Shown: positions 4,221 to 54,617 of the stretch, one piece after another | Numbering within the stretch: the first letter of the stretch is position 1 | Layout of the letters: each line of letters starts with the position of its first letter | IMG/VR virus record: IMGVR_UViG_3300042502_001233 | Coordinates: 62,001-126,000 of that record | Length of the DNA: 64,000 bases | Reading direction: 5' to 3' (one strand) | Notes under the pieces: model-generated | What the model was told of the DNA's origin: nothing | Database searches by the model: none | What the model saw: the letters and a program-made list of their open reading frames with translations, nothing else | Program-made: the position numbers and the translations under genes

Positions 4221-4820
4221 TTATAAAAAATTTCTAACGTACTGATTTCTATGGTACTTACATATCCCATATTCTTTAATTGCGACTATATGTTGAGGGC
4301 TAAGATACCCTTTATTACCATCCCAAAGGTATATTGGATACAATTTATGTAACTTGGTCATGTATTCATCTCGTCTAACTTTAGCTACGATAGCAGCCGC
4401 AGCTATACAAGTATACGTATCATCACCTTTAGGTACAAGTGTTACTGGAATGTCTTTTGTCCATTTATCCCATACAGTACCATCAACAAGGATTTGTTCT
4501 GGTTCAATTGTTAAACCATCAAGACATCTGTGCATTGTTTTAAACGTTGCTGGGTTAATACCCAAATCGTTTATGTCTTGAATAGTACTGGCCAAACAAA
4601 CAACATCCAGCGCGTTATCTAAAATAAGTTTATACGCATCGTTACGTTGTTTTTCGGTAAGTTGTTTGGAATCTCTTATAAGTTCAGACTTGAATCCTTT
4701 TGGCATGATTACCGCTGCCGTCACAACTGGACCAGCACCACAACCTCTACCTACTTCATCTAACCCAGCAACATAATCATAGTCACCGAAATCCTCAAGA
4801 ATTTTTTTTATCTTAGCCAT
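4221..4820 (-). CDS. rnhB: Ribonuclease HII
   Basis: GLDEVGRGCGAGPVV, DSKQL, LVDG, KGDD...IAAAAIVAKVRRD, NKGY motifs. Confidence 0.95.
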   Translation of the reverse strand: MAKIKKILEDFGDYDYVAGLDEVGRGCGAGPVVTAAVIMPKGFKSELIRDSKQLTEKQRNDAYKLILDNALDVVCLASTIQDINDLGINPATFKTMHRCLDGLTIEPEQILVDGTVWDKWTKDIPVTLVPKGDDTYTCIAAAAIVAKVRRDEYMTKLHKLYPIYLWDGNKGYLSPQHIVAIKEYGICKYHRNQYVRNFL

Positions 4821-7699: not shown

Positions 7700-8314
7700 T
7701 TATGCGGTTAACCAAGTATAATATCTTTTGGTCAATGATAATCTATCAGCTAACCCCTTGGTACCACCATTTATTCTTCTGGTCAAACTTCTTATTATTT
7801 TATCATTAACACCTAAATCACATATAGACCATAATTTATTAGTATTAAAAAAGAACATAGCCGATTCAAAAGAAAAATTAGTTGCAACTAAATCTGGGTT
7901 AGCCATTATTTCTGGTCTTTTTATTGAATCTGAAAATAATTTATAATTATTTTTACCAGTTAATTGAATAGCACCTCTACCTCTATATGTCCAACCTTCT
8001 TTTGACGCTTCATTACCGTTACCCATTCTGTTTCCATAAACTCTTGAAGCTATTTTTACTGGTTGTCTTGCGTACTCATTAACATTGTCTTTGGTAAAAT
8101 ATTTTGGAAAAGTTTTTAACAATCCAGTGGCGGAATAGTTTAAATTTTCTGTGAATGATTGAAAACCACCAGTCTCGTGAGATAGCTGACCGAAAAAGTG
8201 TGCCGCTCTTTCTGGTGTTAATTTAAAATACGTCATAGCTGCTTTTAATGTTTTTGGACCAAATGACCCATCAGCTGTAACACCTAATTTTTCTTGTAAT
8301 TTGATTAAACTCAT
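7700..8314 (-). CDS. Glycoside hydrolase family 19 endolysin with N-terminal peptidoglycan-binding segment
   Basis: LQEKLGVTADGSFGPKT (PG-binding), FFGQLSHETGGF...ENLNY, YRGRGAIQLTGKNNY, INGGTKGLADR. Confidence 0.9.
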   Translation of the reverse strand: MSLIKLQEKLGVTADGSFGPKTLKAAMTYFKLTPERAAHFFGQLSHETGGFQSFTENLNYSATGLLKTFPKYFTKDNVNEYARQPVKIASRVYGNRMGNGNEASKEGWTYRGRGAIQLTGKNNYKLFSDSIKRPEIMANPDLVATNFSFESAMFFFNTNKLWSICDLGVNDKIIRSLTRRINGGTKGLADRLSLTKRYYTWLTA

Positions 8315-8410: not shown

Positions 8411-10069
8411 TTATTTGAATAATTCATCAACATTCATTGGTGCAAAATCAATACCGTTTAATTTAACACCTTCATTCATGCTAACATGTTTTTTAGCGTC
8501 AGCAGCTTGTGGTACACTTACTTTATCCCATTCACCAGTTTTTGGAGCTGGAGCATAAGTAGTATTTGATGGATTACCATGAGCAGCAGCTTGTTTTACA
8601 TCCATTTGGTCCCATTCTCCTTCACCTTCTGATTGGTCACCTAACCCCATACCGATTTTAGAGTCACCAGTAGTTCCAACGTGAACATTTTTCTTAGCTT
8701 CTGGAGCTTGTTTTTTAACTTTTTCTAACGAATCAGCTGAACCTGTTTTAGCAGCTGGCGCTTTGGTACCTTTATCTGTCGATACAGAACCTTCTACGTG
8801 TTTTTTAGCGTCAGCAGCTTGAGATACCTTCTCGTCAGTTTTTTTCTCAGAAGCTTTTTTACCTTCGATGTCTTCAGCTTCCATTAATATTTTAGTTTTG
8901 TCCCAGATTTTTCCGAAAGTAGCATTTTCTTCAATTCTTGATTTACCCTTAACAAGACCCAAAGTGTCTTGAGATTTGTAACCCATAAGGTGTTTCATCT
9001 TTTGCATGTCTTCGTTAATCATTGTTTTATCTGAAGCTGTTAGAACTACCGCTCTACCTTCAGATAATGTTCCTTCCCAACGCATTGTGTATGACTCATT
9101 TCCATCAGTCATTTCAAATACTTTGTTATCAACTCTATATGATTCAGGAATCATTTTTAAAGCGTTACCAACGCCATTGAATTCTTGTTTGAATTTAAGT
9201 CTTTTCATCGATTCTTTTTGTGTTTGTTTTGTATTATTATCGTTATGGTTAACTACTTGGTCATTTTTATCTAATGTTTGAATATTTACACCACCTTTTG
9301 TTTTTGTTGGTACTTTATAATCTTTACCGTTTGGTAAAAATTGAACACCTGTAGCAATAGTTTTTCCACCTCTTTTAACATCAAATTTGTTTTTTGTGTC
9401 AACTTTATTTTCAGTAGAAATTTCTCTGTTAGTTTTTTCGTAAGCATCACCTGATGCATCAGCTTGTTCCATATCATCTGGGTCGTCCTTTTTGTCTTTA
9501 TTTTCATTAAGTGCTGAAAAACTTGACATAGGTGCGTAATCATCTGGCACTACTTCAAAATCATCACCAAAGCTAATAACACCTTTAACAGCGTCTTGTC
9601 TTTTCTTGTGAGAAGCTTTGATTGCTTTAACCAAGTTTTTACCAAAATCTGGACCAGTAAACCCTTGTTGTTTTGGAACAACGTTAGCCCATTCTGGGTT
9701 GTTACCCATAGTAGAATCTCCTTCAATAGCTTTTTTAGCTCTATCTTTGAACATTTTGTTTGGGTCTCTGTCATACTCAATCATTTCTTGACCATTCATA
9801 TCTTCCATTTGTTGATGATATGTTTGTTCGTTGTCGTCGTTGTAGTTGAATTTGTTTTGTGGCATCTCTTTGGTTCCCTCAGCTTGTTTCTTAACAGACT
9901 TGTCATAATCTTTAAGATTATCTTGCATGTCTTTGATACCAGCTTTGTTTTCTTTTCCAGATTTTGTACGTATAGCGTTTGTGACTGTGATGCCTGGGGT
10001 ATCGGTAGTCGGTTTAGCTTCGTTCAAGAATCTTTCAACCAAAAAATCTTTTATTATTTTTTTATCCAT
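8411..10069 (-). CDS. Hypothetical low-complexity protein, possibly an internal virion protein, with C-terminal QAADAKKHV repeats
   Basis: 552-aa hydrophilic ORF; GATATTTAT motif upstream; repeats SQAADAKKHVEG / PQAADAKKHVSM / KQAPEAKKNVHVG. Confidence 0.7.
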   Translation of the reverse strand: MDKKIIKDFLVERFLNEAKPTTDTPGITVTNAIRTKSGKENKAGIKDMQDNLKDYDKSVKKQAEGTKEMPQNKFNYNDDNEQTYHQQMEDMNGQEMIEYDRDPNKMFKDRAKKAIEGDSTMGNNPEWANVVPKQQGFTGPDFGKNLVKAIKASHKKRQDAVKGVISFGDDFEVVPDDYAPMSSFSALNENKDKKDDPDDMEQADASGDAYEKTNREISTENKVDTKNKFDVKRGGKTIATGVQFLPNGKDYKVPTKTKGGVNIQTLDKNDQVVNHNDNNTKQTQKESMKRLKFKQEFNGVGNALKMIPESYRVDNKVFEMTDGNESYTMRWEGTLSEGRAVVLTASDKTMINEDMQKMKHLMGYKSQDTLGLVKGKSRIEENATFGKIWDKTKILMEAEDIEGKKASEKKTDEKVSQAADAKKHVEGSVSTDKGTKAPAAKTGSADSLEKVKKQAPEAKKNVHVGTTGDSKIGMGLGDQSEGEGEWDQMDVKQAAAHGNPSNTTYAPAPKTGEWDKVSVPQAADAKKHVSMNEGVKLNGIDFAPMNVDELFK

Positions 10070-10083
10070 TTTTAAAGTTTTAT

Positions 10084-10093
10084 TATAAATATC
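10084..10093 (-). promoter_or_regulatory. Putative phage late-promoter motif GATATTTATA
   Basis: Same motif recurs 5-40 nt upstream of many structural genes and the inserted endonucleases. Confidence 0.55.
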
Positions 10094-10140
10094 TATATTT
10101 TATGTAAAATCTATGTAAATACCTATTATCTATCATTTTT

Positions 10141-12606
10141 TTATCTGTTATCAACACGTGTGTCAATTTTATCAATAATAAATTGAGATACTTTAGATAT
10201 AATTTCTAAATTGTTTTGAATTCTGTCTTTATTAGCCTTCCATAACGCTAAATAAGTAGCATGGTGAGCTACTGGGATTCCATAGTGTTTCAACACAACA
10301 TAGGAAACACTTTCAGCTTGTAGTTCTTGTAACTCATTTTTAGTTCTACCTTCACCATTATCTATATAATATATTGACGATTTTTTCCAGTGCATCAACT
10401 CATGCGCTATTTCGTGAATCGTTGTTGATAACCTAGCAGCACCTGTAACGTCTGAAGAAATATTTATATGGTCACCAGCACTGTATCCTTTTTCACCACC
10501 TTTGGCATCACTTTGTGTTACTCTAATACCCAAATCAGCAGCTACTTCAGTTACTGCGTTATATAACATATCAGCAGTTTCTGATGGTGTGTTATCACCC
10601 CACCATTGTGGTGTGTCAGGAACATCACCTCTTTCATCAATTGGTTCGGTATCACTAATATCAAAAACGTTTACCGCTTTAAATCTAGTTATTTGTGGTC
10701 TATTTGTCATACCCATTTGACCCATCAATTCAGTTGTTTCATCATCGTATTGAGTCATTTCTGGTTTACCAGCTGGTGCTAATATTTTAATTGCTTTTGA
10801 ACCTTTTTTAACTCTTCTAAATTTTGATTCCCACAATTTAAATGAACCAACTTTTGTTGCGTCAGGTTTTTGGATGAATATTAACATTCTATTATAAAAA
10901 CTGTATCCGTGAAATTTAGAGAAGAATGTTAAATATCTTCTAATTTCAGCCGATAACGCAACTTCATCAGTTGCGTTGGCTAAATCCATAATGTATTGGT
11001 CGAGCCTAGCTTTTAAAAAATCTTTATTGTCTGCTGATGAATTTTCAACAGCATCTTCCAAGTCTTCTAATTGGTCTATAATATATTCTGCTTTGTTAAC
11101 TAATGTAAGCGTTTTTTTAGCTATCTCTAATTTGTCAGCATCTATAACCCAATTAGTGCCATTCCAATTAAAACCATTTTGTTTTAAAACAGCTTTATTA
11201 TGAAATGTTTCTTGACTAGCCGCTCTACCTTCTAAATCTGACAAGACAATAAGTTTATTTTGAGTTTTATCGTGTTGTAGTTTTAAAGCTTCGCGAACTA
11301 TACCTTCGTTTAATGAAGGTGCGTTTATATTACCACTAGTTTTTCTTTGTTTTACAACATTATTTACCGCACCAGTACTACATCCACCATTTTGAGCTTT
11401 TTTGTTGTTATTTAGTTTTGTACAATCGTCGATATCAACAAACGAACCACCAGCCCATTGTGTTTTTTCTTCCGCTTTGGTTTTCTTTCGGTTTTTAGGA
11501 AAATTTCCATCTCTAGATATCCCAACAAACCCAGGGTTATCATACCCAATGTTGCCAGCATCAGCTGTATCCATTTCATAAACAACTTTAACATTTAATT
11601 TATCATCGTCAATTGGCATACCTTTACTAATAGGTCCAACACTCATTGGTGCTACAAAAGAACCACCAACACTACCAGCTGTAGTTGATTCACTTACCGT
11701 GTTTAACACGCTAACCAATTTTTTATCTTTGTCATATAAACCTAACAATTCATTTTTTAAAGAACCATCAATTTTTACAATATCGTATTCACCACTCATA
11801 AAAGCATCAGCACCTTCACCAACATTTGATGAAGCCATTACATCGTTGAAATATCTTTGTATTGCAGAATTATCCACTTCCCAATCATCATAATATTCCA
11901 TATCACCATCAGCATCGATAAACCCTTGTTTTTCTGCGTAATCTTCAAAATCATTTTTATTTATATTTGCATGGTTAAATGCAAACATATCATCACTAGT
12001 TTTACTTTTTAAAATTGAAAACTCTGTATTATTGTAAACTAATTCATAATTCTTATTATCTGGTTTATTACCTATTGACGATATTGGGTCTGGTCTATTT
12101 AATGGGTTGTTAGGGTCAAAATCTGAGCCTAACGGAGAGTTATCTTCTTGCATGTTGTGGTTTAACATTTCTGATAATGTTTCGTATATCGATTTTTTTA
12201 TTTCATCTGGCGTACCTAATGACTTAGGAATTCTATAGGTATTTTCTTTTGTGACAAATAGTCCTTTGCTTTCCAATGCTTCACATAAATCTTCATAAGC
12301 CAAATTGTTTTCTCCCCAATATTTTGAAAACTCTTCATTAACACCATAAACATATTTAATAAAATCTTCTACTTCGTTTATATTTAATTTTGGTATTGAG
12401 GTGTTTTTATTATCAATATTAAAATTATTTTTTTTAACAATCTCTTCTTCTGGTATATATTCAAAGTTTGAAATGTCTTTACCAGCAAAAGCTTTTTTAA
12501 AAGTTTTGTTAACTGGGTTTTTTGTATCAAAAGAAACACCTTCATTAATTAAACCAGCAGCTTTTAATTTTTGATATTGTTCTTTGGTTATTTTAATTTT
12601 TTTCAT
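10141..12606 (-). CDS. Large protein with C-terminal ArdC-like ssDNA-binding domain and HExxH metallopeptidase (MPTase/ImmA-IrrE-like) domain
   Basis: FHGYSFYNRMLIFIQKPDATKVGSFKLWE...VKKGSKAIKILAP...FKAVNVFDISDT (ArdC-N-like); TTIHEIAHELMH...ELQAESVSYVV...Y (MPTase-like). Confidence 0.8.
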   Translation of the reverse strand: MKKIKITKEQYQKLKAAGLINEGVSFDTKNPVNKTFKKAFAGKDISNFEYIPEEEIVKKNNFNIDNKNTSIPKLNINEVEDFIKYVYGVNEEFSKYWGENNLAYEDLCEALESKGLFVTKENTYRIPKSLGTPDEIKKSIYETLSEMLNHNMQEDNSPLGSDFDPNNPLNRPDPISSIGNKPDNKNYELVYNNTEFSILKSKTSDDMFAFNHANINKNDFEDYAEKQGFIDADGDMEYYDDWEVDNSAIQRYFNDVMASSNVGEGADAFMSGEYDIVKIDGSLKNELLGLYDKDKKLVSVLNTVSESTTAGSVGGSFVAPMSVGPISKGMPIDDDKLNVKVVYEMDTADAGNIGYDNPGFVGISRDGNFPKNRKKTKAEEKTQWAGGSFVDIDDCTKLNNNKKAQNGGCSTGAVNNVVKQRKTSGNINAPSLNEGIVREALKLQHDKTQNKLIVLSDLEGRAASQETFHNKAVLKQNGFNWNGTNWVIDADKLEIAKKTLTLVNKAEYIIDQLEDLEDAVENSSADNKDFLKARLDQYIMDLANATDEVALSAEIRRYLTFFSKFHGYSFYNRMLIFIQKPDATKVGSFKLWESKFRRVKKGSKAIKILAPAGKPEMTQYDDETTELMGQMGMTNRPQITRFKAVNVFDISDTEPIDERGDVPDTPQWWGDNTPSETADMLYNAVTEVAADLGIRVTQSDAKGGEKGYSAGDHINISSDVTGAARLSTTIHEIAHELMHWKKSSIYYIDNGEGRTKNELQELQAESVSYVVLKHYGIPVAHHATYLALWKANKDRIQNNLEIISKVSQFIIDKIDTRVDNR

Positions 12607-12608
12607 GA

Positions 12609-12860
12609 TTAATTTGCTTTGTTACTTAAACTATCTCTCCACAAACCTCTTTTAACCCATAAGGCTTTATAAAGTTGTGTGAGAACATTTTTTGTTATAT
12701 CAACTATTTTATCTTCTAATTCTTTTTCATTTTTAAGTCTATCTTTAACAATTTTTTCAATTTTCTTTTTGAATTCATTGCTATCCATATAAACTTTAAT
12801 CTCTTTAGAGACATCAGATTTTGATAGTGTTTCGTTTATTTTTTTACTATTTTTAGTCAT
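12609..12860 (-). CDS. Hypothetical protein (likely start MTKNSKK)
   Basis: ATATTTATA motif at 12875-12884 lies inside the longer ORF call, so the downstream ATG is favoured. Confidence 0.7.
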   Translation of the reverse strand: MTKNSKKINETLSKSDVSKEIKVYMDSNEFKKKIEKIVKDRLKNEKELEDKIVDITKNVLTQLYKALWVKRGLWRDSLSNKAN

Positions 12861-12894
12861 AGTGTAGTTTTTATTATAAATATTAAGAATAAAC

Positions 12895-12924
12895 AAAAAA
12901 AGCCCTATATAGGGCTCTTTTATT
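12895..12924 (-). terminator. Rho-independent terminator
   Basis: AGCCCTA-t-ATAGGGCT-type hairpin flanked by A/T tracts. Confidence 0.75.
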
Positions 12925-12937
12925 AAAGATATATTGT

Positions 12938-13660
12938 TTAAAAATCAAACATCAAACCAACACCTAATTGGCTGTTCGTGTTCACAGAACCCAACACGTT
13001 TAATTTTTTGTATCTAAAACCACCTAGGATTTCATAATTTTGTGTTGCTCTATCTGAAGTGGTATTATACTTGGCACCACCAAAATATTTCCAATTTTTT
13101 ATTTTTTGTTCAGCAACTGGTAATGTATGTACGTCAAGACTGTTAACTTCTACAAATTCGCTATCTGTTTTAAGCGTAGCTTTCCATATACCCTCTTTGG
13201 TCTCAGAAATAACCAAATCAAGACTTTGAGGTTGAAATTGGAACTTACCCTTACCTTGTTTGGTAGCTAGGCTTATACCGCCTGTATACTTCAAAGTTTG
13301 TTTTTCTTTGCTTGGGTAATAATCTTCAATATGAACGGAATCATTTTCAACAATTACGTTATCCATTGGTTTTTCAACATCTTTTTGTCTGTATTCAATT
13401 CTGGTGATTATCTTAGGGTTTTTAATATCCATTTCCAAATCTTTAATAATCTTAGCCATATCTCTTTTGGTAACTGTGTCGGCTACTAACTTTTCATATT
13501 GGTTATCACTTATTTTTTTAAGTTTGTCCATTTTAATTTCGTTTTTATGTAGTTCAGCTCTTAACCCTTCAGTTTCTCTATCTGAACTACACTTGGTTAT
13601 ATAAAAAGCCATAAAAGCAAATAACCCAGCAATAACTATTGTTTTAAAATCTAATTTCAT
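12938..13660 (-). CDS. Hypothetical protein with N-terminal membrane anchor and coiled coil, beta-rich C-terminus
   Basis: IVIAGLFAFMAFYITKC hydrophobic segment ending in Cys; alternating aromatic strands ending in ...GLMFDF. Confidence 0.7.
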   Translation of the reverse strand: MKLDFKTIVIAGLFAFMAFYITKCSSDRETEGLRAELHKNEIKMDKLKKISDNQYEKLVADTVTKRDMAKIIKDLEMDIKNPKIITRIEYRQKDVEKPMDNVIVENDSVHIEDYYPSKEKQTLKYTGGISLATKQGKGKFQFQPQSLDLVISETKEGIWKATLKTDSEFVEVNSLDVHTLPVAEQKIKNWKYFGGAKYNTTSDRATQNYEILGGFRYKKLNVLGSVNTNSQLGVGLMFDF

Positions 13661-14201: not shown

Positions 14202-14813
14202 TTATTTTAATTCTAATTTATTTTTAAATTTTAGATAATCCCAACTTGGTGATAAATCAGTATAGTGTTTTTCAAGATTGCTTTTATATATAACACCTTT
14301 GTAATCAAAGAAATTATCAATTTTTGTATTGTGTGGTAACACAGCTTTTGGTATGTTGAATTGTTCGCAAAGCATTTTAACTAGCTCTAATGTTGATTCA
14401 AATTGTTCATCAGTGTATTTATCCCAATACTTATAGTTTCTCCATCGCCTTTCAGAAATATCAATTGGTTTATTATAAATATTACCAACCCATGTAATGT
14501 ATTCATTTTTTTCAATATCTTTAACCAACCAACCATTATTTTCTAACAATATAATGATTGACTTGTTATTCAACTCATCACTATCTAAAAATTCTGAAGA
14601 ATATTTAGGGTCAAAATGTTTATAAACAAAACCAGCCGCATCTATTGTAAATGCAGCTGTTTTTTTATATTTTCCGTTATATCTTTTTTTCCACCCTAGG
14701 AAATGTTTCATATCTGAATTAAAAGTATGTCCTATAACTATTTGTGTTTTTTCACTTTCAATCGGTGTAAAATTCTTTTCTGTTAAAGAATATGTTGTAT
14801 CATCTAAAACCAT
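14202..14813 (-). CDS. N-acetylmuramoyl-L-alanine amidase (Amidase_2)-like protein, possibly degenerate
   Basis: KTQIVIGHT, FTIDAAG.VYKHFDP, SIIILLEN.G, YTDEQFESTLELVKMLCEQFNIP, TDLSP.WD pattern. Confidence 0.7.
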   Translation of the reverse strand: MVLDDTTYSLTEKNFTPIESEKTQIVIGHTFNSDMKHFLGWKKRYNGKYKKTAAFTIDAAGFVYKHFDPKYSSEFLDSDELNNKSIIILLENNGWLVKDIEKNEYITWVGNIYNKPIDISERRWRNYKYWDKYTDEQFESTLELVKMLCEQFNIPKAVLPHNTKIDNFFDYKGVIYKSNLEKHYTDLSPSWDYLKFKNKLELK

Positions 14814-16045
14814 TAACTACGTCTAAAGTAATTGTTATTTTTATTTATAGGTTTTTCATTGGTGCCACTAACTTTTTGAATAGTGTTACCTTTTGGATAA
14901 GGTACGTTTACTGAAAACCCTCTATTTCTATCTTTAACTTCTTTGATGTCATCAAGTTTTATCTTACCATAAGTTTGTTGTTCCGCTGAAGGTAAAACAA
15001 CTTCTTCAATTTCTGGTTCTGGTTCTGGAATATCTTCTAGGATTGATTCTTCATTATCCACTATAGGTTCTATAGGTAAATCATCAAACTCTCTAGTAAA
15101 AACTCCAGGTGACTTAAATTTAGTGATATCAACATCAGGTTTAGTTTGTGCTCCAACGTTTTTTACTTCTTTAATTTTTCGCTTGTAATTTTTTATTTTG
15201 GTTAATATGGATTCTTTTTTTCTTTTTGCAACTTCTGGTTCTGGTATGTATTGACCACTTTCAATTTGAAATACTCTGTTTGTAATCAAAATCAACGCTA
15301 CAGCTAACGGGTCAAACACAAATATCAATAATAATATCAAATAGTTAACAACTTTTGCCATTGATACCCCAGTTAATTCTGCAATATATTTCAACGGACC
15401 AACCTCTGCTGCTACTTCACTACCAGATTTTAATTCTAGCGCTTTTGTGTTGTATACACTGATGGAATCCGATAAACTAGCATTTTTAATATTTAACACA
15501 TCTATATCTGTTGATAATTTTTGAATTTCAGTGTTGGCAGTTGAAATATCACCTCTAACACTGTTTCTAGCTCTATTTGAATTAGAACCGTCTAGTCTAG
15601 CTTCTTGTGTTGTTCTTAACCCACTTAATTGGTCAATACGTTTGTTTTTACTATCTATGATTTTTTGATTGTCTGCAACGCTTTTTTCAAATATTTGTTT
15701 TTTACCATCTAACACACTTAATTCACCTTCATGAATTTCTAGTTTGTTAGCGGTCTTTTGATAAGCATTTGAAAGGAAACCGTAAATACCAGCTGAGGTT
15801 ATAAGCATTAGTACAACAACACTAAACGTTAAGTAAGTTCTAAGCCCTTTAGCTAGTTTACCCCAATAAGTATGAAGAGCTGTTGTTGTAACAATTTTAC
15901 CAACTTCTAATACTGAAGCCATAATAATGACCGCAGTACTAGCGCCAGCGAATAATTGACTTAAACCCCAAACTGAGAAATAGGCTGCGCAACCAGCTAC
16001 TGATAACGCAAGCAATAACATAATATATTTAATCTTAAACTTCAT
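14813..16045 (-). CDS. Membrane protein with long coiled coil between TM segments
   Basis: Three N-terminal TM helices, heptad region, EVGPLKY, FVFDPLAVAL TM, acidic/Pro tail. Confidence 0.75.
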   Translation of the reverse strand: MKFKIKYIMLLLALSVAGCAAYFSVWGLSQLFAGASTAVIIMASVLEVGKIVTTTALHTYWGKLAKGLRTYLTFSVVVLMLITSAGIYGFLSNAYQKTANKLEIHEGELSVLDGKKQIFEKSVADNQKIIDSKNKRIDQLSGLRTTQEARLDGSNSNRARNSVRGDISTANTEIQKLSTDIDVLNIKNASLSDSISVYNTKALELKSGSEVAAEVGPLKYIAELTGVSMAKVVNYLILLLIFVFDPLAVALILITNRVFQIESGQYIPEPEVAKRKKESILTKIKNYKRKIKEVKNVGAQTKPDVDITKFKSPGVFTREFDDLPIEPIVDNEESILEDIPEPEPEIEEVVLPSAEQQTYGKIKLDDIKEVKDRNRGFSVNVPYPKGNTIQKVSGTNEKPINKNNNYFRRS

Positions 16046-16076: not shown

Positions 16077-16910
16077 TTATTGGTTTATTAATTCTTGCAA
16101 TGTTTGTGTATGGTGTCTTAACTTTCTGATTGCTTTTTCTTTGATTTGTCTGATTCTTTCTTTTGTCAAATCATATTTATCACCAATGGCTTCAAGTGTC
16201 ATTGCTTCGTGTGTTATGTTCATTCCGAAATATGATTCAACAATCATTTTCTCTCTTTCATCCAACACACTTAATATTTTATTTAATTCGTCTTTAACTT
16301 TATCGTTAACCTCAATCTCATCAATGTTTAAAGTTAACGGTTCACTTACTAACAAATCAACAATTTCACCACCTTCTTCACCAATCAATTTGTTCAATGA
16401 AGAAGTTTTTGAATAATTTAATATTGATAAATCATTTTCTTCATTAAACATATCAACATAAATAGGGTCTGTTTCGTTTTCTTGTTCTGTATTTGACATT
16501 TCTTTATTCAATTTTGAAATTTTGTTAATAACGTTAGCTGGTAATCTTACTACTCTAGCGTTATCGTTAAGACTTTGAATAATTGATTGTTTTACCCACC
16601 ATACAGCGTAAGAGATAAATCTAAACCCTCTTTTATGGTCAAATCTGTGAGCAGCTTTGATTAGGCCGTAATTACCTTCATTTATCAAATCTGATAATGG
16701 AAGACCTTGCCCTTGATATTCTTTTGCGATTGAAATCACAAATTTAAGGTTGGCTTCCACCAACTCGGTAGTCGCTTTTGTATCACCTTTTTTTATTCTT
16801 TTTGCTAATTCTATCTCTTGACTAGGAGTCAAGATAATAGATTTTTTTACTTCTTTAAAATACTTTGAAACTGTGTCATCTGTACTATAATTTACATACT
16901 TTTTGTTCAT
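16077..16910 (-). CDS. RNA polymerase sigma-70 factor, RpoD-like (regions 1.2-4)
   Basis: YFKEV...LT..QEIELA (1.2), ANLKFVISIAKEYQGQGLPLSDLINEGN.GL..AA.RFD..RGFRFISYAVWW (2), TLEAIGDKYDLTKERIRQIKEKAIRKLR (4.2). Confidence 0.95.
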   Translation of the reverse strand: MNKKYVNYSTDDTVSKYFKEVKKSIILTPSQEIELAKRIKKGDTKATTELVEANLKFVISIAKEYQGQGLPLSDLINEGNYGLIKAAHRFDHKRGFRFISYAVWWVKQSIIQSLNDNARVVRLPANVINKISKLNKEMSNTEQENETDPIYVDMFNEENDLSILNYSKTSSLNKLIGEEGGEIVDLLVSEPLTLNIDEIEVNDKVKDELNKILSVLDEREKMIVESYFGMNITHEAMTLEAIGDKYDLTKERIRQIKEKAIRKLRHHTQTLQELINQ

Positions 16911-26096: not shown

Positions 26097-27035
26097 TTAA
26101 TCTTTAAGTTTATGCGCGGTTTTTAAAAGTTTAACAATACCTTGGTTACCTAGTCTTTCGTATATCTTAGATGGGTCAAAACCTTCTGGTGGTCTAACTA
26201 TCCTAACTCTACCTTCCAAATCATAATTATCCAACTGCCTATATAGGTTTTGAGCATCTTGATAAGCGTCATCATCCAACACAACAACAACAAAAGACTT
26301 GGCTTTTTCTTGTAATAAATCAAATAATTTGTCAGAAACATATTTACCCAGTAGAGGTATTGAGTTCGGGGTTACTATATGGTCTGTGACACCTTCAACC
26401 AAATAGATTGTTGCGTCCCAATTAACTCTACCTTCATTGAAAACTATCTCTTGTTTTTCAGCGTCTGGGTTTAAGTATTTTATTTTTGTATATTTTTTGT
26501 CAAACCATCTGGCCACAAAATAGTTTAAGTTGTCGTCAACATCAAATGATGGAACGACAACTCTATTGTAAAAGTCTCCTTTGATTGTGTATCCTATGTC
26601 AAAATCTTTGATTATTTTATCTGTAATACCACGTTGATATAAATAATCTTTGGCTATTTCTGATTTGTAGTCTTTAAATGTACAGTCAGCTAGTTTCTTA
26701 TAACCCTCTGGTAGTTTTACAACAACTTTCTTCTGTTCTCTGTCTTTAAACTCATCAGGTTTTAATAAGAAATAATCCGCTAAATTTTTTTTGGTACCGT
26801 ATTTTTTGATTAGTTTTGAAATGGGTCCATGCATGTGGTTTGTATCGTGACAAACCCAACAGTTATAAACACCTTTGTCGTAATTAAGTTCTAGGTTTCC
26901 TTTTCCGTCACCGTTGACCAAACCTTTTTCAGCTGAACAAGCTGGACAATCAAAAGCGATTTGCCCAGTATCCTCATTATGCTTTCTAGGGTCACCTAAA
27001 AATGATTCGAATATGTCTACCAAATATAAACTCAT
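26097..27035 (-). CDS. DNA primase (zinc-binding domain + TOPRIM)
   Basis: CPAC...CWVC; RGI; FYNRVVVP; KYLN; VEGVTD; VLDDDA; DP. Confidence 0.9.
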   Translation of the reverse strand: MSLYLVDIFESFLGDPRKHNEDTGQIAFDCPACSAEKGLVNGDGKGNLELNYDKGVYNCWVCHDTNHMHGPISKLIKKYGTKKNLADYFLLKPDEFKDREQKKVVVKLPEGYKKLADCTFKDYKSEIAKDYLYQRGITDKIIKDFDIGYTIKGDFYNRVVVPSFDVDDNLNYFVARWFDKKYTKIKYLNPDAEKQEIVFNEGRVNWDATIYLVEGVTDHIVTPNSIPLLGKYVSDKLFDLLQEKAKSFVVVVLDDDAYQDAQNLYRQLDNYDLEGRVRIVRPPEGFDPSKIYERLGNQGIVKLLKTAHKLKD

Positions 27036-31775: not shown

Positions 31776-33245
31776 TTAGTATGAATTTATCGAATTAGTT
31801 GTAATTGTTATAGGCACTGTTTCACTGTAAACAATACTATTTAAAATATTACCACAAATCGTAGTATAATGTTTGGTGTTTTTAACTCTGTAATATAACT
31901 TTGTACCAGTTGTACCAGTTGCTATAAACGAATTGTTATAATGTTGACCACCCGAAAAATAATCAGTATTTCCAGTATAATAAAACGAACCAAAATTAAC
32001 ATCTGAACTAACTTCTAAAGTAAAATAACCATTATTGTTTGTTGGTGGGTTGGAAATATACCAACTGATAGTTGGGTTATTTGTATTTAACGCATTAACG
32101 ACATCAATTACTGGAAAATAAACAATTGTGATTATATCATTAACTACTATTTCACCTTCAAATATAATTCTTTTAGCGTTAGTTTTTGATTGGTAAAAAT
32201 CAATACCATTTGCCAAGGTAATACCATTTAACATTACAATCATAGTGCTAAAATTTTGCGGTGTTACTGAAGCATAGGCTTCATATTTGTTTGTGCTTGT
32301 GTTATAATAGATTAAATTATTACCTTGGTTGTTTGTAGCACCACTAACTATTGTAGTTGCCACGTTAATCACATCACTATTTAATACATTATCACCATTT
32401 GTTGTGTATATAATCGTAATTACATCATCTTTGGTTGTATAACCACTTAATGTTACAAGAGTGTTATCCACAGTATAATCTAAATCTTTAGCCAATACCA
32501 ATCCATTTAAAGTTAAAACAAAACTACCATAATAATTGTTGGGGATTGTAACTACGTTTGTTGGGTATGGACCTTCATAATCTGGGTCTGAATTAATAGT
32601 CCCATCATCAACCCTTAATATTGTTTGAGATAGCGAACCACTACTGATATAATTACTACCATTTGACGTGAACAATGGAGTTTCAGCTTCTTTAAACGCA
32701 ATAAAATAATAATCACTATTTCCGTTATATATACCATATTGTGTACCAAATACATTATTACCAGTGTATTGTTTTTTACCCATTTTATTCAAATAGTTAG
32801 TACACGCATCAAACGTATAGTAACCTTTTATTATGTAATCACCATCCAAACTTAAATTAGTGACTGGGATTGATTGTGTTGTTGCACTAGTAGCGCTAAA
32901 TGTTGAAAATTCTATGTTATTAGATTTATAAACAGCCGTTGATGAAAAACCAGAAAAATTTGGATTATATTTATATACTTGATATTGAAAAACAGCATTG
33001 TTTTGAATAAAACTATTAGTGTTTGCTGTGAATATAAATGTCATTGGTATAGATGAAGTATCGGCAGATAAAATATATGTATTACCACTTGTTGAACCAG
33101 TGCAGTCTATTTTAGAAGCGCCAGAAACTGAAAAACTAGGCGCGTTAAATATGCACATATCTGAACTCATATTAAAACTATTTATATCTTTATTTCTAAC
33201 ACCGTTGTATTCGTTTTGTATGTATATTCTCTCTTGATATCTCAT
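31776..33245 (-). CDS. Putative virion structural protein with tandem beta repeats
   Basis: LNGLVLAKDLDY...ITIIY / LNGITLANGIDF...ITIVY repeats; T/N/S-rich; structural cluster. Confidence 0.6.
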   Translation of the reverse strand: MRYQERIYIQNEYNGVRNKDINSFNMSSDMCIFNAPSFSVSGASKIDCTGSTSGNTYILSADTSSIPMTFIFTANTNSFIQNNAVFQYQVYKYNPNFSGFSSTAVYKSNNIEFSTFSATSATTQSIPVTNLSLDGDYIIKGYYTFDACTNYLNKMGKKQYTGNNVFGTQYGIYNGNSDYYFIAFKEAETPLFTSNGSNYISSGSLSQTILRVDDGTINSDPDYEGPYPTNVVTIPNNYYGSFVLTLNGLVLAKDLDYTVDNTLVTLSGYTTKDDVITIIYTTNGDNVLNSDVINVATTIVSGATNNQGNNLIYYNTSTNKYEAYASVTPQNFSTMIVMLNGITLANGIDFYQSKTNAKRIIFEGEIVVNDIITIVYFPVIDVVNALNTNNPTISWYISNPPTNNNGYFTLEVSSDVNFGSFYYTGNTDYFSGGQHYNNSFIATGTTGTKLYYRVKNTKHYTTICGNILNSIVYSETVPITITTNSINSY

Positions 33246-34015
33246 TATTCTGTAATTGTATTTGTTTCACAATTGTAATTAACATTGTCTGTTGCTTTAT
33301 AGTAACCCAAACCAGTAAGTGGACCACCAATACTTCCGTTACTGTAAACCAAGGACGTAGGAAAACCACTATTACTAGCTGTACTTAAAGAAAACACATC
33401 ATTTTCTGGATATATCAAATAAAAACCATTGTTGCTATTTGACCCTAAATTATATTCAACCAAAGATACTTGTGCTCTATAATTAACACCCAAATTCCAA
33501 AATGTTGTGTTTAAAAAATCCACAAAATCAGTGTATGTCAAACCAGTTGTTTTACCTGTACATGCTGATACGACTGTGTTGTTGGCTGGTATCCAATTTG
33601 CTGTTAATGAATTAACAGATGCAGACAATGGTGTTGTTATTTTTTCAATACCATTTATTACAAAACTATTTATAGTAAAAATAACTGTGCTTGGACCAGG
33701 ATAAATACCACAACTCAAACCCATCATATAATCTGGGCTTTCTTGCATGTTGTACCATGTAGCTTTTTTGTTACATGTGCTAAAATTTAATTCTTGTACC
33801 ACTTGATTATATTGAACTTGGTAACCGAATAAGTTTGGAATGGTCAACGCAGCAGTTTCTTCAGTATTTGATAAATTTTGTAGGAAGGCAGTAAACCCAT
33901 AAATTTGTATACAATCATTATTTTGAAGTTCAGCGTTTATTTTATTCGCATAGTTTATGTTACCAATTACATTGGTAACAAAATTCCCTTCTATATTCTT
34001 AATTAAGTTTAACAT
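33245..34015 (-). CDS. Putative virion protein duplicating the C-terminal domain of the 1137-aa neighbour
   Basis: WYNMQ.SP, VVSACTG.TTGLTYT.FVD.LN, AQVSLVE shared; ATATTTATA at 34019-34028. Confidence 0.7.
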   Translation of the reverse strand: MLNLIKNIEGNFVTNVIGNINYANKINAELQNNDCIQIYGFTAFLQNLSNTEETAALTIPNLFGYQVQYNQVVQELNFSTCNKKATWYNMQESPDYMMGLSCGIYPGPSTVIFTINSFVINGIEKITTPLSASVNSLTANWIPANNTVVSACTGKTTGLTYTDFVDFLNTTFWNLGVNYRAQVSLVEYNLGSNSNNGFYLIYPENDVFSLSTASNSGFPTSLVYSNGSIGGPLTGLGYYKATDNVNYNCETNTITE

Positions 34016-34333: not shown

Positions 34334-37300
34334 TTATTCATTAATTTCTTCAGTAAAACAATTGTAATTATTGGTGCTTCTGTATAAGTAATAACTTGAA
34401 TCAAAATCTTCAACAAACAAATTATTATTAGTGTATGTTAATATTGCTGGTGTTGGTCCATCACTTGTCGTTGTTATTGTAAACACATCATTCGTTGGGA
34501 AGACAAGATACATACCATTACCACTTTCGTTACCAATTGGTGTTCTTTCAACTAACGAAACTTCAGCTTTATAATCAACCCCAAAACTAACAAACATATT
34601 GTTTAATAAATCAACAAAGTTTGTATAAGTTAAACCAGTTGTTGTACCCGTACATGCAGATACAACTAAATTATCAGCAGCAACCCAATTTGTTGTTGCG
34701 TTAGTGACGAAACCAGATAATGGTGTTGTTATATATTCAGCACCGTTTATCATAAAGCTTTGAATTATATAATTAAAATCTGTTGCTGCCGAAATTGGAC
34801 CACATTTGAAGTGATTCATAAGGAATTCTGGGCTATCTTGCATGTTATACCATCCAGCTGTTTTTTCACAAGACACAACGTCTTCACAAAAATCACTATA
34901 TGAAATAATTGAATCACCGTTTATAACGTTAACGTTACCAATAAATTCAGAACCATAGTTAAATTGAGACAAACATACTCTACTAAAAGTTGTTATATTT
35001 GAACCAGTATTTAAAGCTGTTGTTGGTACATTACCAGTTGGAATATTTCTAGTAGTAACCTCAACAGTAGCACATTGCCCAGAAGAACCGTTTATTGGAC
35101 TTGGAACACCTAAAACGTTTAATGGGTCATTACAAAATATTGATGAATAAGGTTTATATTTTAATTTTTGTTGGTCGAACATGGTGTTTGTGTACACTTT
35201 AATACTACCCCATAATGTTGTTGACGGAATAACTTGTTCAATAAGGTCATCCCAATAGGTTGTGATTAAATTACTAAACTCATCCATTTTGTAATAATCA
35301 AAACCTAAACTAGATGTAGCACAATATTTATCGCTATTTAAATATCTATCATAAATCGCTCTAAGAGTTGGATAACCAGATAATATTTTTCTGGATTTTA
35401 CATCTATAAAATCACCCATTAAATATTCAAAATTTTCAATAGTTTTTACTTCGGTAATGTTGTCAGTTAAATAGGTAGAAAAATCTATATTGTTATCACC
35501 ATATGTAATAGTGTTAACATTACAACAATTTTCGTTTGTGTAATCAATTGCGTTATTTTCTAAATATAAAGTCCCACCACCAAAAGGTGAGTTAACATAG
35601 GGAATCCAACCATCTTCTGGTGGGTTTAAACCAATACTAGGATTAGATGATATACTAGTAATATTACCCGATATTACTGGAGGTGTAACAAAATTAGAAG
35701 TTTGAGTGGCAACCCAATCAGAACCATCGAAATATATTGTTAAATTTGAATTAAATATTGTAACTAGTTTTGTTGAAAACCATTTTTTTCCATTATATAC
35801 ACCCATATGTCGCATAGGGAAAAAATTAGATTCTGTGTTAATAGATTCATTAATCCACCTCACTTGAATACATGTTGAACCAGTTAATAAACATGGGTTT
35901 TCACTCATATAACACCAAACATCATATTCTACAGCTGATGCTATATTCATATTCAAATCAATTTCTTTGCTGTTGATAATTAATCTATCATCATTTACAT
36001 CATATTCTGTTTGACGAATAGGGTTTGTATCAAATACGTTTGTGATGTTAAAGTCTCTATAATCGTATTCAGTGTTGTTTAACCATGATTTTTTGTTATC
36101 TATTATTTTGGTTAAATTAAAACCTGGAGATTCATTTAATAGTATTGTGGAAACGAAACTATCTTCACATTCTCTCTGTAAAGTTATTTGGTCTATTAAA
36201 AGACAAAATACACCACAACTATTGTTTATATTGATACTTAATTTTATTTTCTTATTAGCTATTTGTGAAATTAAATCATCACCAGTTAATAATTGGTCAA
36301 ATGTAATCCAATTTGATGCTAATACTGTTGGTGATAATGCTGCGTTAAACGAATCGTAATCACTAGTAGTATCGTAACCAGATTGAGCAAATAACTCGTC
36401 GTAAATTGCATTTTTAACTGTTTCACAAACATTATCGTCTACAGTTTCTGGTAATTCTCCATTAGTGAATTCTGGATAAATCAATGGGGTACAACTATTT
36501 AGCGCTTCTGAAGCACCACAAACATAAAACCCACTATCGCTAGGGTGTTGTGTTAACCAGTTATACAAGCTTGTTGTTTGCAACCCAAATAATTGTAATG
36601 GTTGTACTGGAGTTAATGTATTATCATCATTAACCACGTCAATAGAAGCTGTTAATGTTAAATTTTCAAAATAATCTAAAATGTTTGTACAAGATGTGTC
36701 TACTATACCAATATCTATTGCTGATATTTGACCATTTAATTCATTAACAATTGCATCTGATTTTTGTTTAAGTATAATATTCTCGTTAATAGTTTTTTTT
36801 AACTCTGTTTTAGCACCAAAAGGTGTATCACACTCAACAATAATTTGATTATTACCTTGTTTAGCTAAATCATTGTTTAAATTATACATTTCAATGACGT
36901 GTTTACAAGTGTAACTACTTGGGTCACCTTCAATAAACCCAACATAATTATTTTCACCAATTATTTTTCTCCAATATTCTAACCCATCATTTATTATACA
37001 AAAAGTAGCAACCCTAGTTGGTAACGCAAAAGACATCGGTGCTAAATTACCAAATCCAGTTTTGCTAAACGCTGATTTTTGTTCACTATTTAAAGTTACT
37101 GTGTCAGCGCTAGTATTAGGTGCGATATCTGGTGATATTTGTTTTGAATTAGCGTCATATGGAAATAAATCGCAAACAATTGAATAATTGGTTTTAGAAT
37201 ATTCATCGGCCAAAGATGATAATTTATACGAAATTTGTTCTGAGTTTGATGTTTCTTCAGCTAGTTTATTTTTTAACGATATAAGTTCTTCGTTCTGACT

Positions 37301-53519: not shown

Positions 53520-53520
53520 A

Positions 53521-54561: not shown

Positions 54562-54617
54562 AATCAGTTTTTCTAATAAATATCTAAAATTATTATAAAA
54601 ACCAATTTATGTATAGG

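What the first reader, a model, noticed from the sequence alone, without database searches (positions are those of the whole stretch)
10141..12606. ArdC-like ssDNA-binding + HExxH metallopeptidase module fused to a long virion-type N-terminus
The C-terminal ~290 aa carry ArdC-N-like and MPTase (HEIAH...ELQAESV) motifs. This pairing is known from plasmid ArdC and phage/plasmid polyvalent proteins involved in early conflict with host defences (established). Here it is appended to ~500 aa beginning MKKIKITKEQYQKLKAAGLINEG, with several putative maturation sites, among late-motif genes. Inference: an anti-defence enzyme that is packaged in the head, released by proteolysis and co-injected with the DNA.
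Basis: partly seen in the sequence, partly recalled or inferred. Interest (0 to 1): 0.65.

Follow-up and report, generated by a model that had tools for sequence, protein, structure and literature searches.

The report
Capsid-targeted ArdC-like protein, jumbo phage
A giant lake-water phage of the T4 type encodes an ArdC-like DNA-binding metalloprotease fused behind a carrier module. Its N-terminal signal and cleavage sites resemble those T4 uses to load proteins into the head, so it is probably an injected counter-defence protein, but this is not proven.

Summary
The ORF is real: window 10141-12606, on the minus strand, 821 aa. The window lies in a 362-kb T4-superfamily jumbo phage from lake water, with host-type promoters typical of Bacteroidota.

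Residues 507-820 are a two-domain ArdC-like protein. Pfam ArdcN scores above its cut-off. The model matches plasmid R388 ArdC at Z 11.4 over 238 residues. HExxH, the Glu helix and a Tyr are invariant in 81 relatives.

The protein is a fusion of two modules that also occur alone:
- an N module (1-435) with no known fold;
- a C module (436-821).

The packaging idea gains circumstantial support:
- A 22-residue N-terminal leader ends in a gp21-type [LI]-x-E motif. It sits on 4-5 unrelated ORFs in this genome and 2-4 in each of five related genomes.
- A disordered linker copies the predicted maturation site of the phage's own major capsid protein (E|STTAGS).
- A third conserved L-x-E|G lies exactly at the module junction.
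- The genome encodes a gp21-family prohead protease.
- The operon uses the promoter class shared with the terminase and head-protease genes.

Nothing shows directly that the protein is packaged, cleaved or active. ArdC in huge phages is already reported; the new part is the leader, carrier and cargo arrangement.

The parts
12896..12921 (-). Intrinsic-terminator-like hairpin with a T run that closes the upstream unit
   Evidence: 11-pair stem, 4 G-C pairs, T tail; sequence.
12869..12883 (-). Class-A ('late-type') promoter motif ATATTTATAATAAAA, 23 nt before the ATG of the 83-aa ORF
   Evidence: The 8-mer ATATTTAT is about 11-fold enriched upstream of genes and peaks 20-25 nt before start codons. 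The same class precedes the terminase large subunit, the head-protease operon, tail-side genes and homing endonucleases. Replication and metabolism genes carry TAnnTTTG instead.
12609..12860 (-). 83-aa Lys/Glu-rich ORF of unknown function; its stop lies 2 nt before the ATG of the 821-aa gene, so the two are probably co-transcribed and coupled
   Evidence: An 83-aa ORF sits at the same place in the 338-kb relative L010. A metatranscriptome contig of a close relative spans 12540-12700 (weak).
10141..12606 (-). The 821-aa gene (P0001): leader, N module, linker, ArdC-like C module
12541..12606 (-). Residues 1-22: N-terminal leader (MKK-[IL]-K-I-T-K-E-Q-Y ... G-L-I-[KN]-E), a predicted amphipathic helix ending in [LI]-x-E|G. 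Proposed capsid-targeting propeptide
   Evidence: It is conserved in nearly all 120 homologues and duplicated in tandem in many. It is more conserved (0.62) than the next 60 residues (0.30-0.37). Helix at 8-16. It is found on 4-5 other ORFs of this genome and on 2-4 ORFs in each of 5 related genomes.
11692..12414 (-). Residues 65-305: folded part of the N module (helical domain about 76-155, alpha/beta domain about 175-300), no known fold or family
   Evidence: AF2 pLDDT 82-94 in these blocks. No convincing match in PDB (best Z 4.4), BFVD or ESM Atlas. No Pfam or PHROG hit.
11647..11700 (-). Residues 303-320: TVSE|STTAGSVGGSFVAP, a copy of the capsid protein's predicted maturation site. Proposed prohead-protease site
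   Evidence: Own MCP reads LLTE|STTAGSSGSF. Its Glu60 aligns with T4 gp23 Glu65, whose bond to Ala66 is the known cleavage site (for the alignment; the T4 site is textbook knowledge). These are the only two ORFs in the genome with ESTTAG. The family consensus x-D-E|(T/M)-T-x-A-A-S-S-G-A-F is seen in about 60 of the ~120 listed homologues and in paired genomes. The site lies in the disordered stretch 307-361.
11326..11463 (-). Residues 382-427: highly conserved two-Cys motif (W-A-G-G-x-F-V ... C ... G-G-C-S-x-G), function unknown
   Evidence: Identity 0.76-0.78 in the family. It ends the stand-alone N modules, recurs at the C-end of P0108, P0110 and P0113 and precedes some stand-alone C modules. 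It is unique in the genome.
11302..11325 (-). Residues 428-435: N-A-P-S-L-N-E|G, a nearly invariant L-x-E|G exactly at the junction of the N and C modules. Proposed release site for the ArdC-like fragment
   Evidence: P430 is invariant and A429, S431 and L432 nearly so. [LIVM]xE is kept in 25 of 28 sequences. Stand-alone N modules end here and stand-alone C modules begin at q432-439.
11092..11301 (-). Residues 436-505: small beta-beta-alpha-alpha-beta domain (E-T-F-x-N-K ... G-F-x-W-x-G-x-x-W) that always precedes the phage-type ArdC-like module; absent from plasmid ArdC
   Evidence: Only weak fold matches (Z under 5).
10597..11088 (-). Residues 507-670: ArdC-N-like (ssDNA-binding type) domain
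   Evidence: Pfam ArdcN matches 558-648 at 27.6 bits, above the 22.6 cut-off. Structural alignment to R388 ArdC starts at model residue 72 against chain residue 8.
10144..10596 (-). Residues 671-821: gluzincin (ArdC / IrrE / MPTase-type) metallopeptidase domain. HEIAH is at 731-735 (nt 10402-10416), ELQAE at 761-765 (nt 10312-10326), and Tyr785 is conserved
   Evidence: H, E, H, E-L-Q-A-E and Y are invariant in 81 sequences. Fold matches are ArdC (Z 11.4), then IrrE/PprI (Z 7.5-8.0) on this domain. The residue roles follow R388 ArdC H201/E202/H205/E229/Y255 (PMC7213743) and rest on spacing, not on a residue-level superposition.
10078..10092 (-). Second class-A promoter motif, 23 nt before the next gene (552 aa, unknown, window 8411-10069); there is no terminator between the two genes

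Best explanation
P0001 is most likely a late-made, head-packaged ejection protein of a T4-type jumbo phage.

Proposed sequence of events:
1. It is transcribed with a small upstream ORF from a late-class promoter.
2. Its 22-residue N-terminal leader acts like the T4 capsid-targeting sequence and takes the 92-kDa precursor into the assembling prohead.
3. The gp21-family prohead protease then cuts after Glu at conserved [LIV]-x-E sites: E22|G23 removes the leader; E306|S307 (and perhaps E344) cuts the disordered linker; E434|G435 frees a 44-kDa fragment.
4. That fragment is the same unit that other huge phages encode as a free-standing protein: a small domain, an ArdC-N ssDNA-binding domain and a gluzincin metallopeptidase domain.
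5. The fragment leaves the head with the DNA. In the newly infected cell it shields the incoming genome, by binding single-stranded or partly single-stranded DNA as plasmid ArdC does and/or by cleaving a host protein.

Shown here: the ORF, the domains and fold, the modularity, the shared leader, the motif identity with the capsid protein, the presence of the protease gene and the promoter class.

Inferred: targeting, cleavage, ejection and the anti-defence activity.
For: 1. ArdC-like identity.

2. Modular build. The N module stands alone (498 aa, 72% identity) at the syntenic locus of a 338-kb relative. The C module stands alone in 586 proteins of about 400 aa in other huge T4-like phages. The breakpoints coincide with the proposed cleavage sites.

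3. The genome is of the T4 type. It has Peptidase_S77 (gp21 family; 91.7 bits, cut-off 27) and a gp23-family capsid protein.

4. The leader is the best-conserved stretch of the variable N part. A profile of it finds 4 ORFs in the genome at E 1e-8 to 2e-4, each exactly at the N-terminus, plus a fifth by pattern. It also finds 12 ORFs of several unrelated sizes and families in five complete related genomes. All end in [LI]-x-E about 15-27 residues in, against 14% of all genes having such a motif at residues 17-28.

5. The capsid protein's predicted cleavage site (aligned with T4 gp23 Glu65) reappears in P0001's disordered linker, a seven-residue identity found nowhere else in the genome. Both motifs are conserved in relatives.

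6. The class-A promoter is shared with the terminase, the head-protease operon and tail-side genes. DNA polymerase, helicases, primase and nucleotide-metabolism genes use the host-type TAnnTTTG promoter. An anti-restriction protein made late can act early only if it is carried in the virion.

7. Precedent. T4 internal proteins share only a capsid-targeting sequence that gp21 removes; IPI* is an injected restriction inhibitor; Alt (76 kDa) is packaged and processed (PMC3012670; PMC9026906). ArdC-N + MPTase proteins of phages have been predicted to be packaged and injected (PMC5512222).
Against: - There is no direct evidence of packaging, cleavage or ejection.
- The leader is twice as long as the 10-residue T4 CTS, and no homology to it was shown.
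- The known head-core neighbours of the protease gene do not carry this leader. Three of the other leader-bearing genes lie in a tape-measure/baseplate block; T4 alt also lies beside baseplate genes.
- The class-A promoter also precedes homing endonucleases and lies 45 nt upstream of DnaB, so 'late' is an inference from gene content.
- The complex prediction of protease with the linker gave no answer.
- The R388 ArdC protease activity is not needed for its anti-restriction effect, and its target is unknown (PMC7213743). The mode of action on a dsDNA phage genome is therefore open.
- A close relative keeps the N module without the ArdC part, so the N module has a role of its own that is not explained.
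Confidence: 0.55

Rival explanations
1. The protein is late and cytoplasmic, and is not packaged. The ArdC-like module would work inside the producing cell. It could coat single-stranded regions of replicating or recombining concatemers, remove DNA-protein adducts before packaging (as Spartan/SprT-type relatives do), or cleave a host protein late in infection. The leader would be an oligomerisation or regulatory helix, and the [LIV]-x-E motifs would have no role.
For: The metallopeptidase fold is shared with IrrE/PprI and Spartan, which act on DNA-bound or regulatory proteins. The class-A promoter also drives non-structural genes such as homing endonucleases. There is no direct evidence for packaging.
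Against: This does not explain four things: why the same leader heads 4-5 unrelated proteins per genome and always ends in the protease motif; why the capsid protein's cleavage site is copied in a disordered linker; why a conserved L-x-E|G marks the module junction; and why the domain breakpoints in the family fall at these sites.
Confidence: 0.2
2. The protein is carried in the virion but through the tail or baseplate, not the head interior. The leader would dock proteins to the tail-assembly machinery or the tape measure. The proteins would be expelled from the tail lumen at infection.
For: Three of the other leader-bearing genes (G000 140375-141349, 145125-147626, 147946-148356) lie among tape-measure-like, baseplate-hub-like and tube-like genes. 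P0001 is flanked by two peptidoglycan hydrolase genes, GH19 and Amidase_2.
Against: The leader ends in the motif of the HEAD maturation protease, and the internal site copies the HEAD protein's site. In T4 the head-packaged Alt gene also lies beside baseplate genes (PMC5512222), so position is not decisive. A 92-kDa globular multi-domain protein is an unlikely tail-lumen passenger.
Confidence: 0.12
3. The N module is the functional, possibly structural, head-internal protein. The ArdC-like part is an optional appendage whose metallopeptidase mainly serves self-processing of the fusion, as proposed for MPTase domains of polyvalent proteins, rather than attacking host defence.
For: The N module stands alone at the same locus in a close relative and in about 25 of the listed homologues. 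MPTase domains have been proposed to autoprocess polyvalent proteins (PMC5512222). R388 ArdC does not need its protease for anti-restriction.
Against: The C module is far better conserved than the N module (0.7-0.95 against 0.3-0.5 identity). It exists as a free protein with an intact active site in hundreds of phage contigs, where there is nothing to self-process.
Confidence: 0.1

Closest known systems
ArdC of IncW plasmids R388/pSa (PDB 6I89, 6SNA)
   Same: Same two-domain build: an ArdC-N ssDNA-binding domain followed by a gluzincin metalloprotease domain with HExxH, a Glu helix and a Tyr. It is the best structural match (Z 11.4, 238 of 265 residues). Pfam ArdcN scores above its cut-off.
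   Different: Only 15-16% identity, and sequence and profile searches against PDB do not reach it. It is encoded by a phage, not a conjugative plasmid. It carries an extra 70-aa domain and a 435-aa N module with a leader. It is driven by a late-class promoter. Activity is untested.
ArdC genes of huge phages (bioRxiv 10.1101/2025.02.27.640493; 'ArdC-like MPTases' of group 3 jumbo phages, PMC7824862)
   Same: These are ArdC homologues with conserved key residues in phages above 200 kb from water and other habitats. This gene and the roughly 400-aa stand-alone C modules belong to that phenomenon.
   Different: In the parts I read, those reports describe presence and fold only. They do not mention a shared N-terminal leader, a carrier module, protease sites or a late promoter.
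T4 internal proteins IPI*, IPII, IPIII and their capsid-targeting sequence
   Same: Otherwise unrelated proteins of one genome share only a short N-terminal propeptide. It ends in the prohead-protease motif (hydrophobic-x-Glu) and is removed in the prohead. IPI* is an injected restriction inhibitor (PMC3012670, PMC9026906). The same pattern is seen here by sequence.
   Different: The leader is 22 residues rather than 10, and no sequence homology was shown. P0001 is large and acidic (92 kDa, pI 5.1), whereas the IPs are small and basic. Nothing has been tested experimentally.
T4 Alt (packaged, processed, injected ADP-ribosyltransferase)
   Same: It is a large enzyme made late, packaged in the head, trimmed by gp21 and injected to act before phage gene expression. 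Its gene lies among baseplate genes.
   Different: The enzyme is different (an ART against an ArdC-like metalloprotease), and there is no homology.
Polyvalent proteins of phages and conjugative elements (Iyer et al. 2017); P1 DdrB, N4 virion RNAP
   Same: ArdC-N plus MPTase is a core pairing in those proteins, which are predicted or known to travel with the DNA.
   Different: This protein is much simpler, with one enzymatic module only. The proposed release is by the prohead protease at T4-type sites rather than by the protein's own MPTase.

Membership tests
ArdC (ArdC-N + metalloprotease) | N-terminal ArdC-N ssDNA-binding domain (PF08401) | tested here: met
   Pfam ArdcN scores 27.6 bits against a 22.6 cut-off, residues 558-648. 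Structural alignment to R388 ArdC starts at its residue 8.
ArdC (ArdC-N + metalloprotease) | C-terminal gluzincin metalloprotease domain with HExxH, a metal-binding Glu on the next helix and a Tyr | tested here: met
   H731, E732, H735, E761-L-Q-A-E765 and Y785 are invariant in 81 sequences. The fold matches ArdC, IrrE and PprI. Residue roles are assigned by spacing to R388 H201/E202/H205/E229/Y255.
ArdC (ArdC-N + metalloprotease) | Sequence-profile membership of the peptidase domain (Pfam MPTase-PolyVal or Peptidase_M78) | tested here: inconclusive
   15.9 bits against 27.5, and 16 bits against 22: both below cut-off. PHROG 7245 'anti-restriction protein' covers both domains at E 6.7e-19.
ArdC (ArdC-N + metalloprotease) | Binds ssDNA and relieves type I restriction in the recipient cell | not testable with these tools
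   Needs EMSA and restriction-alleviation assays.
ArdC (ArdC-N + metalloprotease) | Encoded on a conjugative plasmid or element | tested here: not met
   It is encoded in a 362-kb T4-type phage genome.
T4-type capsid-targeted (CTS-bearing) ejection proteins | A short N-terminal propeptide shared by otherwise unrelated proteins of the same genome | tested here: met
   4-5 ORFs in G000 and 12 ORFs in five related genomes, always at the N-terminus.
T4-type capsid-targeted (CTS-bearing) ejection proteins | The propeptide ends in the prohead-protease motif (hydrophobic-x-Glu), and a gp21-family protease is encoded | tested here: met
   All leaders end in [LI]-x-E. Peptidase_S77 scores 91.7 bits. 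The capsid protein site aligns with T4 gp23 Glu65.
T4-type capsid-targeted (CTS-bearing) ejection proteins | Sequence homology of the leader to the T4 CTS | not tested
   No tool-derived T4 IP sequence was compared. The leader is 22 residues against 10 for the T4 CTS.
T4-type capsid-targeted (CTS-bearing) ejection proteins | Found in the virion in processed form and ejected | not testable with these tools
   Needs virion proteomics. The complex prediction gave no answer.
Polyvalent proteins (Iyer et al. 2017) | Several domains of disparate activity in one polypeptide of a phage or conjugative element, typically including ArdC-N and MPTase | tested here: met
   It has an ArdC-N domain, a metallopeptidase domain and at least three uncharacterised domains. 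With only one recognisable enzymatic activity, it sits at the simple end of the class.

The most novel reading that the evidence does not exclude
The 22-residue K-I-T-x-E-Q leader may be a portable capsid-targeting signal of a whole clade of uncultured lake-water T4-type jumbo phages of Bacteroidota. If so, every ORF that carries it (4-5 per genome, including this ArdC-like fusion and a family of about 110-aa proteins) belongs to the injected proteome. The 'E|xTTxxSSGxF' stretch shared with the capsid protein would be an extended recognition or docking element of the prohead protease. That would give a sequence rule for reading injected counter-defence proteins directly from metagenomes.
Probability: 0.45. 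Interest if true: 0.75.

Novelty: new variant of a known kind. Interest (0 to 1): 0.6.

Why it matters
Proteins that travel inside the phage head act before any phage gene is expressed. They are a main route for overcoming restriction and other first-line defences, yet outside T4, P1, N4 and the phiKZ group they are known almost only from proteomics of cultured phages.

If this leader and cleavage-site grammar is real, it would do three things:
- identify the ejected proteins of a large group of uncultured freshwater jumbo phages from sequence alone;
- show ArdC, a plasmid anti-restriction protein, being delivered as a pre-made protein by a dsDNA phage;
- offer a testable signal for loading foreign proteins into heads of phages that infect Bacteroidota.

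If it is wrong, what remains is one more ArdC homologue in a huge phage, which is already a reported phenomenon.

Tried and rejected
- Plus-strand reading of the coordinates gives only stops; the gene is on the minus strand.
- Near-identity DNA search in cultured phages found nothing. A protein search there found only 8 weak hits, all to the C-terminal third.
- Sequence and profile searches of PDB sequences do not reach ArdC. Only the fold comparison does.
- N module: no Pfam or PHROG family. No fold match in PDB by Foldseek, PDB by VIA wide (best Z 4.4), BFVD, ESM Atlas by structure, or Atlas by features and structure. I do not claim a new fold, because the model is 435 residues long and the domains were not folded singly.
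- Complex prediction of the prohead protease with P0001 288-330 returned 'no answer' (score 0.00). This is no evidence either way.
- tblastn with the 24-residue leader against cultured phages found no match; the query is too short.
- The 338-kb relative (L010) is not held, so I could not ask whether it encodes the C module elsewhere.
- I looked for alternative cargo on longer N-module proteins (P0099, P0100, P0103, P0026 and others). Pfam shows nothing beyond ArdcN and one DUF5661.
- The other leader-bearing ORFs and the head-core neighbours have no PHROG or Pfam family.
- I tested whether the 499-aa ORF upstream of a stand-alone C module (L011) is an N module. It is not; it looks like a Gly/Ser-rich repeat, fibre-like protein.
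- Fine co-variation between the capsid-protein site and the N-module site across paired genomes was not seen. Both keep the same consensus but do not track each other residue by residue.
- The RNA run X24 holds only fragments of a roughly 93%-identical relative, as contigs. It cannot show a transcript start, strand or timing.
Full report
**What is there.** The coordinates hold one uninterrupted ORF on the minus strand: ATG at 12606, stop at 10141-10143, 821 aa, P0001. The window is bases 62001-126000 of a 362,018-bp IMG/VR virus record rated complete, with about 30% G+C. The genome encodes a gp21-family prohead protease (Peptidase_S77, 91.7 bits) and a gp23-family major capsid protein, so it is a jumbo member of the T4 superfamily. 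The nearest cultured capsid protein is that of Flavobacterium phage immuto, at 38% identity. The DNA recurs in lake-water metagenomes of many studies. Contigs from three other runs cross the middle of the gene without a difference, so the fusion is real.

**The C-terminal part.**
- Pfam ArdcN matches residues 558-648 above its cut-off. The two peptidase models are below theirs.
- PHROG 7245 'anti-restriction protein' covers 560-817.
- An alignment of 81 relatives shows H731, E732, H735, E761-L-Q-A-E765 and Y785 to be invariant.
- The AlphaFold model of 436-821 (pLDDT 78.9) has plasmid R388 ArdC as its best PDB match over both domains. Foldseek gives E 1e-6. VIA gives Z 11.4 with 238 of 265 residues aligned, corresponding to P0001 507-820.
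- IrrE/PprI follow on the peptidase domain only (Z 7.5-8.0).
- The spacing of the invariant residues fits the R388 catalytic set H201/E202/H205/E229/Y255 (PMC7213743).

Residues 436-505 form an extra small domain that plasmid ArdC lacks.

**Modularity.** Homologue mapping shows two modules.
- The N module (1-435) occurs alone as proteins of 460-500 aa. One is a 498-aa, 72%-identical protein at the exactly syntenic locus of a 338-kb relative: sigma factor, 417 aa, Amidase_2, 180, 240, 83, [498], 505, GH19.
- The C module (436-821) occurs alone in 586 proteins of about 400 aa at 50-60% identity. They lie on phage contigs of up to 710 kb with T4-type genes nearby.
- Many fused relatives keep the C part at 70-82% identity while the first 300 residues drop to 30-40%, with a breakpoint near residue 305.
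- The C part is much better conserved than the N part.
- The N module has no family and no recognisable fold.

**The leader.**
- The first 22 residues (M-K-K-[IL]-K-I-T-K-E-Q-Y ... G-L-I-[KN]-E) are conserved in almost all homologues. In many they are duplicated in tandem.
- They are better conserved than what follows and are predicted helical.
- A profile of the leader finds three further ORFs in this genome, each exactly at the N-terminus (E 1e-4 to 2e-4 among 1727 ORFs). A fifth was found by pattern only; the profile scores it at E about 40.
- These ORFs are of 112, 136, 324 and 833 aa, have no detectable family, and all have the class-A promoter.
- The profile finds 12 more ORFs in five complete related genomes, again N-terminal and of several sizes and families.
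- Every leader ends in [LI]-x-E. Only 14% of all genes have such a motif at residues 17-28. Part of this is built into the profile, but three hits were aligned only up to position 16, and the own-genome hits only over 12 residues.
- Some stand-alone C modules carry the same type of leader directly, for example P0133, P0184 and P0216.

This is the pattern described for the T4 capsid-targeting sequence: diverse internal proteins share only a short propeptide that gp21 removes (PMC3012670; PMC9026906).

**Cleavage sites.**
- The capsid protein's L-L-T-E60|S-T-T-A-G-S-S-G-S-F aligns with T4 gp23 F-L-T-E65|A-E-I-G-G. The T4 bond is the textbook maturation site.
- P0001 residues 303-320 read T-V-S-E306|S-T-T-A-G-S-V-G-G-S-F. 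These two ORFs are the only ones in the genome with E-S-T-T-A-G.
- The P0001 stretch lies in the only long disordered region of the model, 307-361.
- About 60 of the ~120 listed homologues carry x-D-E|(T/M)-T-x-A-A-S-S-G-A-F.
- In paired genomes the capsid site and the N-module site both keep the 'E|xTTxxSSGxF' consensus, without fine co-variation.
- Two more conserved sites lie in unstructured parts: V-Y-E344|M, and the nearly invariant N-A-P-S-L-N-E434|G. The latter is exactly where stand-alone N modules end and stand-alone C modules begin.
- Cutting at 22, 306 and 434 would give fragments of 32, 13 and 44 kDa.

**Expression class.** Two upstream motifs divide the genome.
- TTTG ... TAnnTTTG is the Bacteroidota primary-sigma type (my knowledge). 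It precedes DNA polymerase, helicases, primase, RNase H, a nuclease, PRPP synthase and a Lon-like protease.
- CTTTT-N13-ATATTTATAATAAAA peaks 20-25 nt before start codons. It precedes the terminase large subunit, the head-protease operon, tail-side genes, all leader-bearing genes and several homing endonucleases.

The P0001 unit runs as follows: terminator hairpin, class-A motif, an 83-aa ORF, then P0001 two bases after its stop. A further class-A motif serves the next gene. Calling class A 'late' is an inference from gene content. A phage sigma-70-family factor lies 3.5 kb upstream.

**Interpretation.** A late precursor is taken into the prohead by a CTS-like leader. It is cut by the gp21-type protease at the leader end, in the linker and at the module junction. 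The released ArdC-like 44-kDa fragment is then ejected with the DNA.

What it does there is inferred from plasmid ArdC. That protein prefers ssDNA and tailed duplexes, counters HsdRMS, and has a protease domain of unknown target that is dispensable in the one assay tried. Phage ArdC-N + MPTase proteins have been predicted to be injected (PMC5512222). ArdC homologues in huge phages are already reported (PMC7824862; bioRxiv 2025.02.27.640493). I found no paper in the library that reports ArdC in a virion proteome. The ArdC identity is therefore not new. The leader, carrier and cargo grammar and the capsid-site mimicry appear to be.

**Limits.** Packaging, cleavage, ejection and activity remain untested. 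The complex prediction gave no answer. The N module's own role is unknown. Some leader-bearing genes sit in the tail-gene block, as T4 alt does. I put 0.55 on the full packaged, processed and injected model, and above 0.9 on the ArdC-like domain assignment.

Noticed in passing
whole genome G000; in the window e.g. 26097-27035(-) primase and 4221-4820(-) RNase HII (class B) against 8411-10069(-) and 34334-37747(-) (class A): There are two sharply separated promoter classes. TTTG...TAnnTTTG, typical of Bacteroidota, sits on replication and metabolism genes. CTTTT-N13-ATATTTATAATAAAA sits on terminase, head-protease, tail-side and homing-endonuclease genes. This points to a Bacteroidota host.
   Followed up: partly
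window 16077-16910 (-): A phage-encoded sigma-70-family factor (PHROG 351, E 1e-61; regions 1.2, 2 and 4 in the orthologue of L010). It is a candidate reader of the class-A promoters.
   Followed up: no
G000: 10732, 31314, 41748, 207708, 208451, 210527, 239644, 352281 (gene starts; all outside the window): A second recurrent N-terminal motif, M-K-x-x-I-K-x-x-L-R-E, heads 8-9 otherwise different ORFs, several beside the head module. Most stand-alone ArdC-like proteins of other huge phages start with a similar M-K-x-L-I-K-K-x-L-x-E-A-L. Its meaning is unknown; it may be a second sorting signal.
   Followed up: partly
window 11326-11463 (-), residues 382-427: A very conserved two-Cys motif (W-A-G-G-x-F-V ... 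C ... G-G-C-S-x-G) moves around as a unit. It is found at the end of stand-alone N modules, before some stand-alone C modules and at the C-end of P0108, P0110 and P0113. No function is known and the model is poor there.
   Followed up: partly
window 52422-56099 (-): The ribonucleotide reductase large subunit is split in two ORFs: 54618-56099 matches profile positions 63-489 and 52422-53519 matches 488-795. A 346-aa endonuclease-like ORF (53521-54561) lies between them. It looks like a gene split by a homing endonuclease.
   Followed up: no
G000:220596-223595 (-), outside the window: The terminase large subunit is 999 aa. A middle segment (residues 489-673) matches an anaerobic-RNR PHROG. This may be an intein or an inserted domain.
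   Followed up: no
window 7700-8314 (-) and 14202-14813 (-): Two peptidoglycan hydrolase genes flank the locus on the same strand: GH19/endolysin-like PHROG 181, and Amidase_2. The arrangement is conserved in the 338-kb relative.
   Followed up: no
G000:212119-214008 (-), P0121: The major capsid protein is 629 aa. The Gp23 profile matches it in two pieces, leaving roughly 200 residues (about 100-330) as an insertion relative to T4 gp23.
   Followed up: no
G000: genes at 37077, 41748, 76813 (window 14813-16045), 95245 (window 33245-34015), 210527, 239644, 246013, 307683: In about eight genes the class-A motif starts only 12 nt before the ATG. Their mRNAs would then be leaderless or nearly so.
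   Followed up: no
G000:246013-246351 (-) and orthologues L168, L170, L178: A conserved family of proteins of about 110-130 aa carries the leader followed by a shared D-x-N-Y ... G-G-E-Y ... P-M core. They are small, like T4 internal proteins, and are good candidates for ejected proteins.
   Followed up: partly
window 10000-13000, runs X1-X24: The phage, or near-identical strains, is present in lake-water metagenomes of at least seven studies. A freshwater metatranscriptome holds fragments of a roughly 93%-identical relative of this gene.
   Followed up: partly
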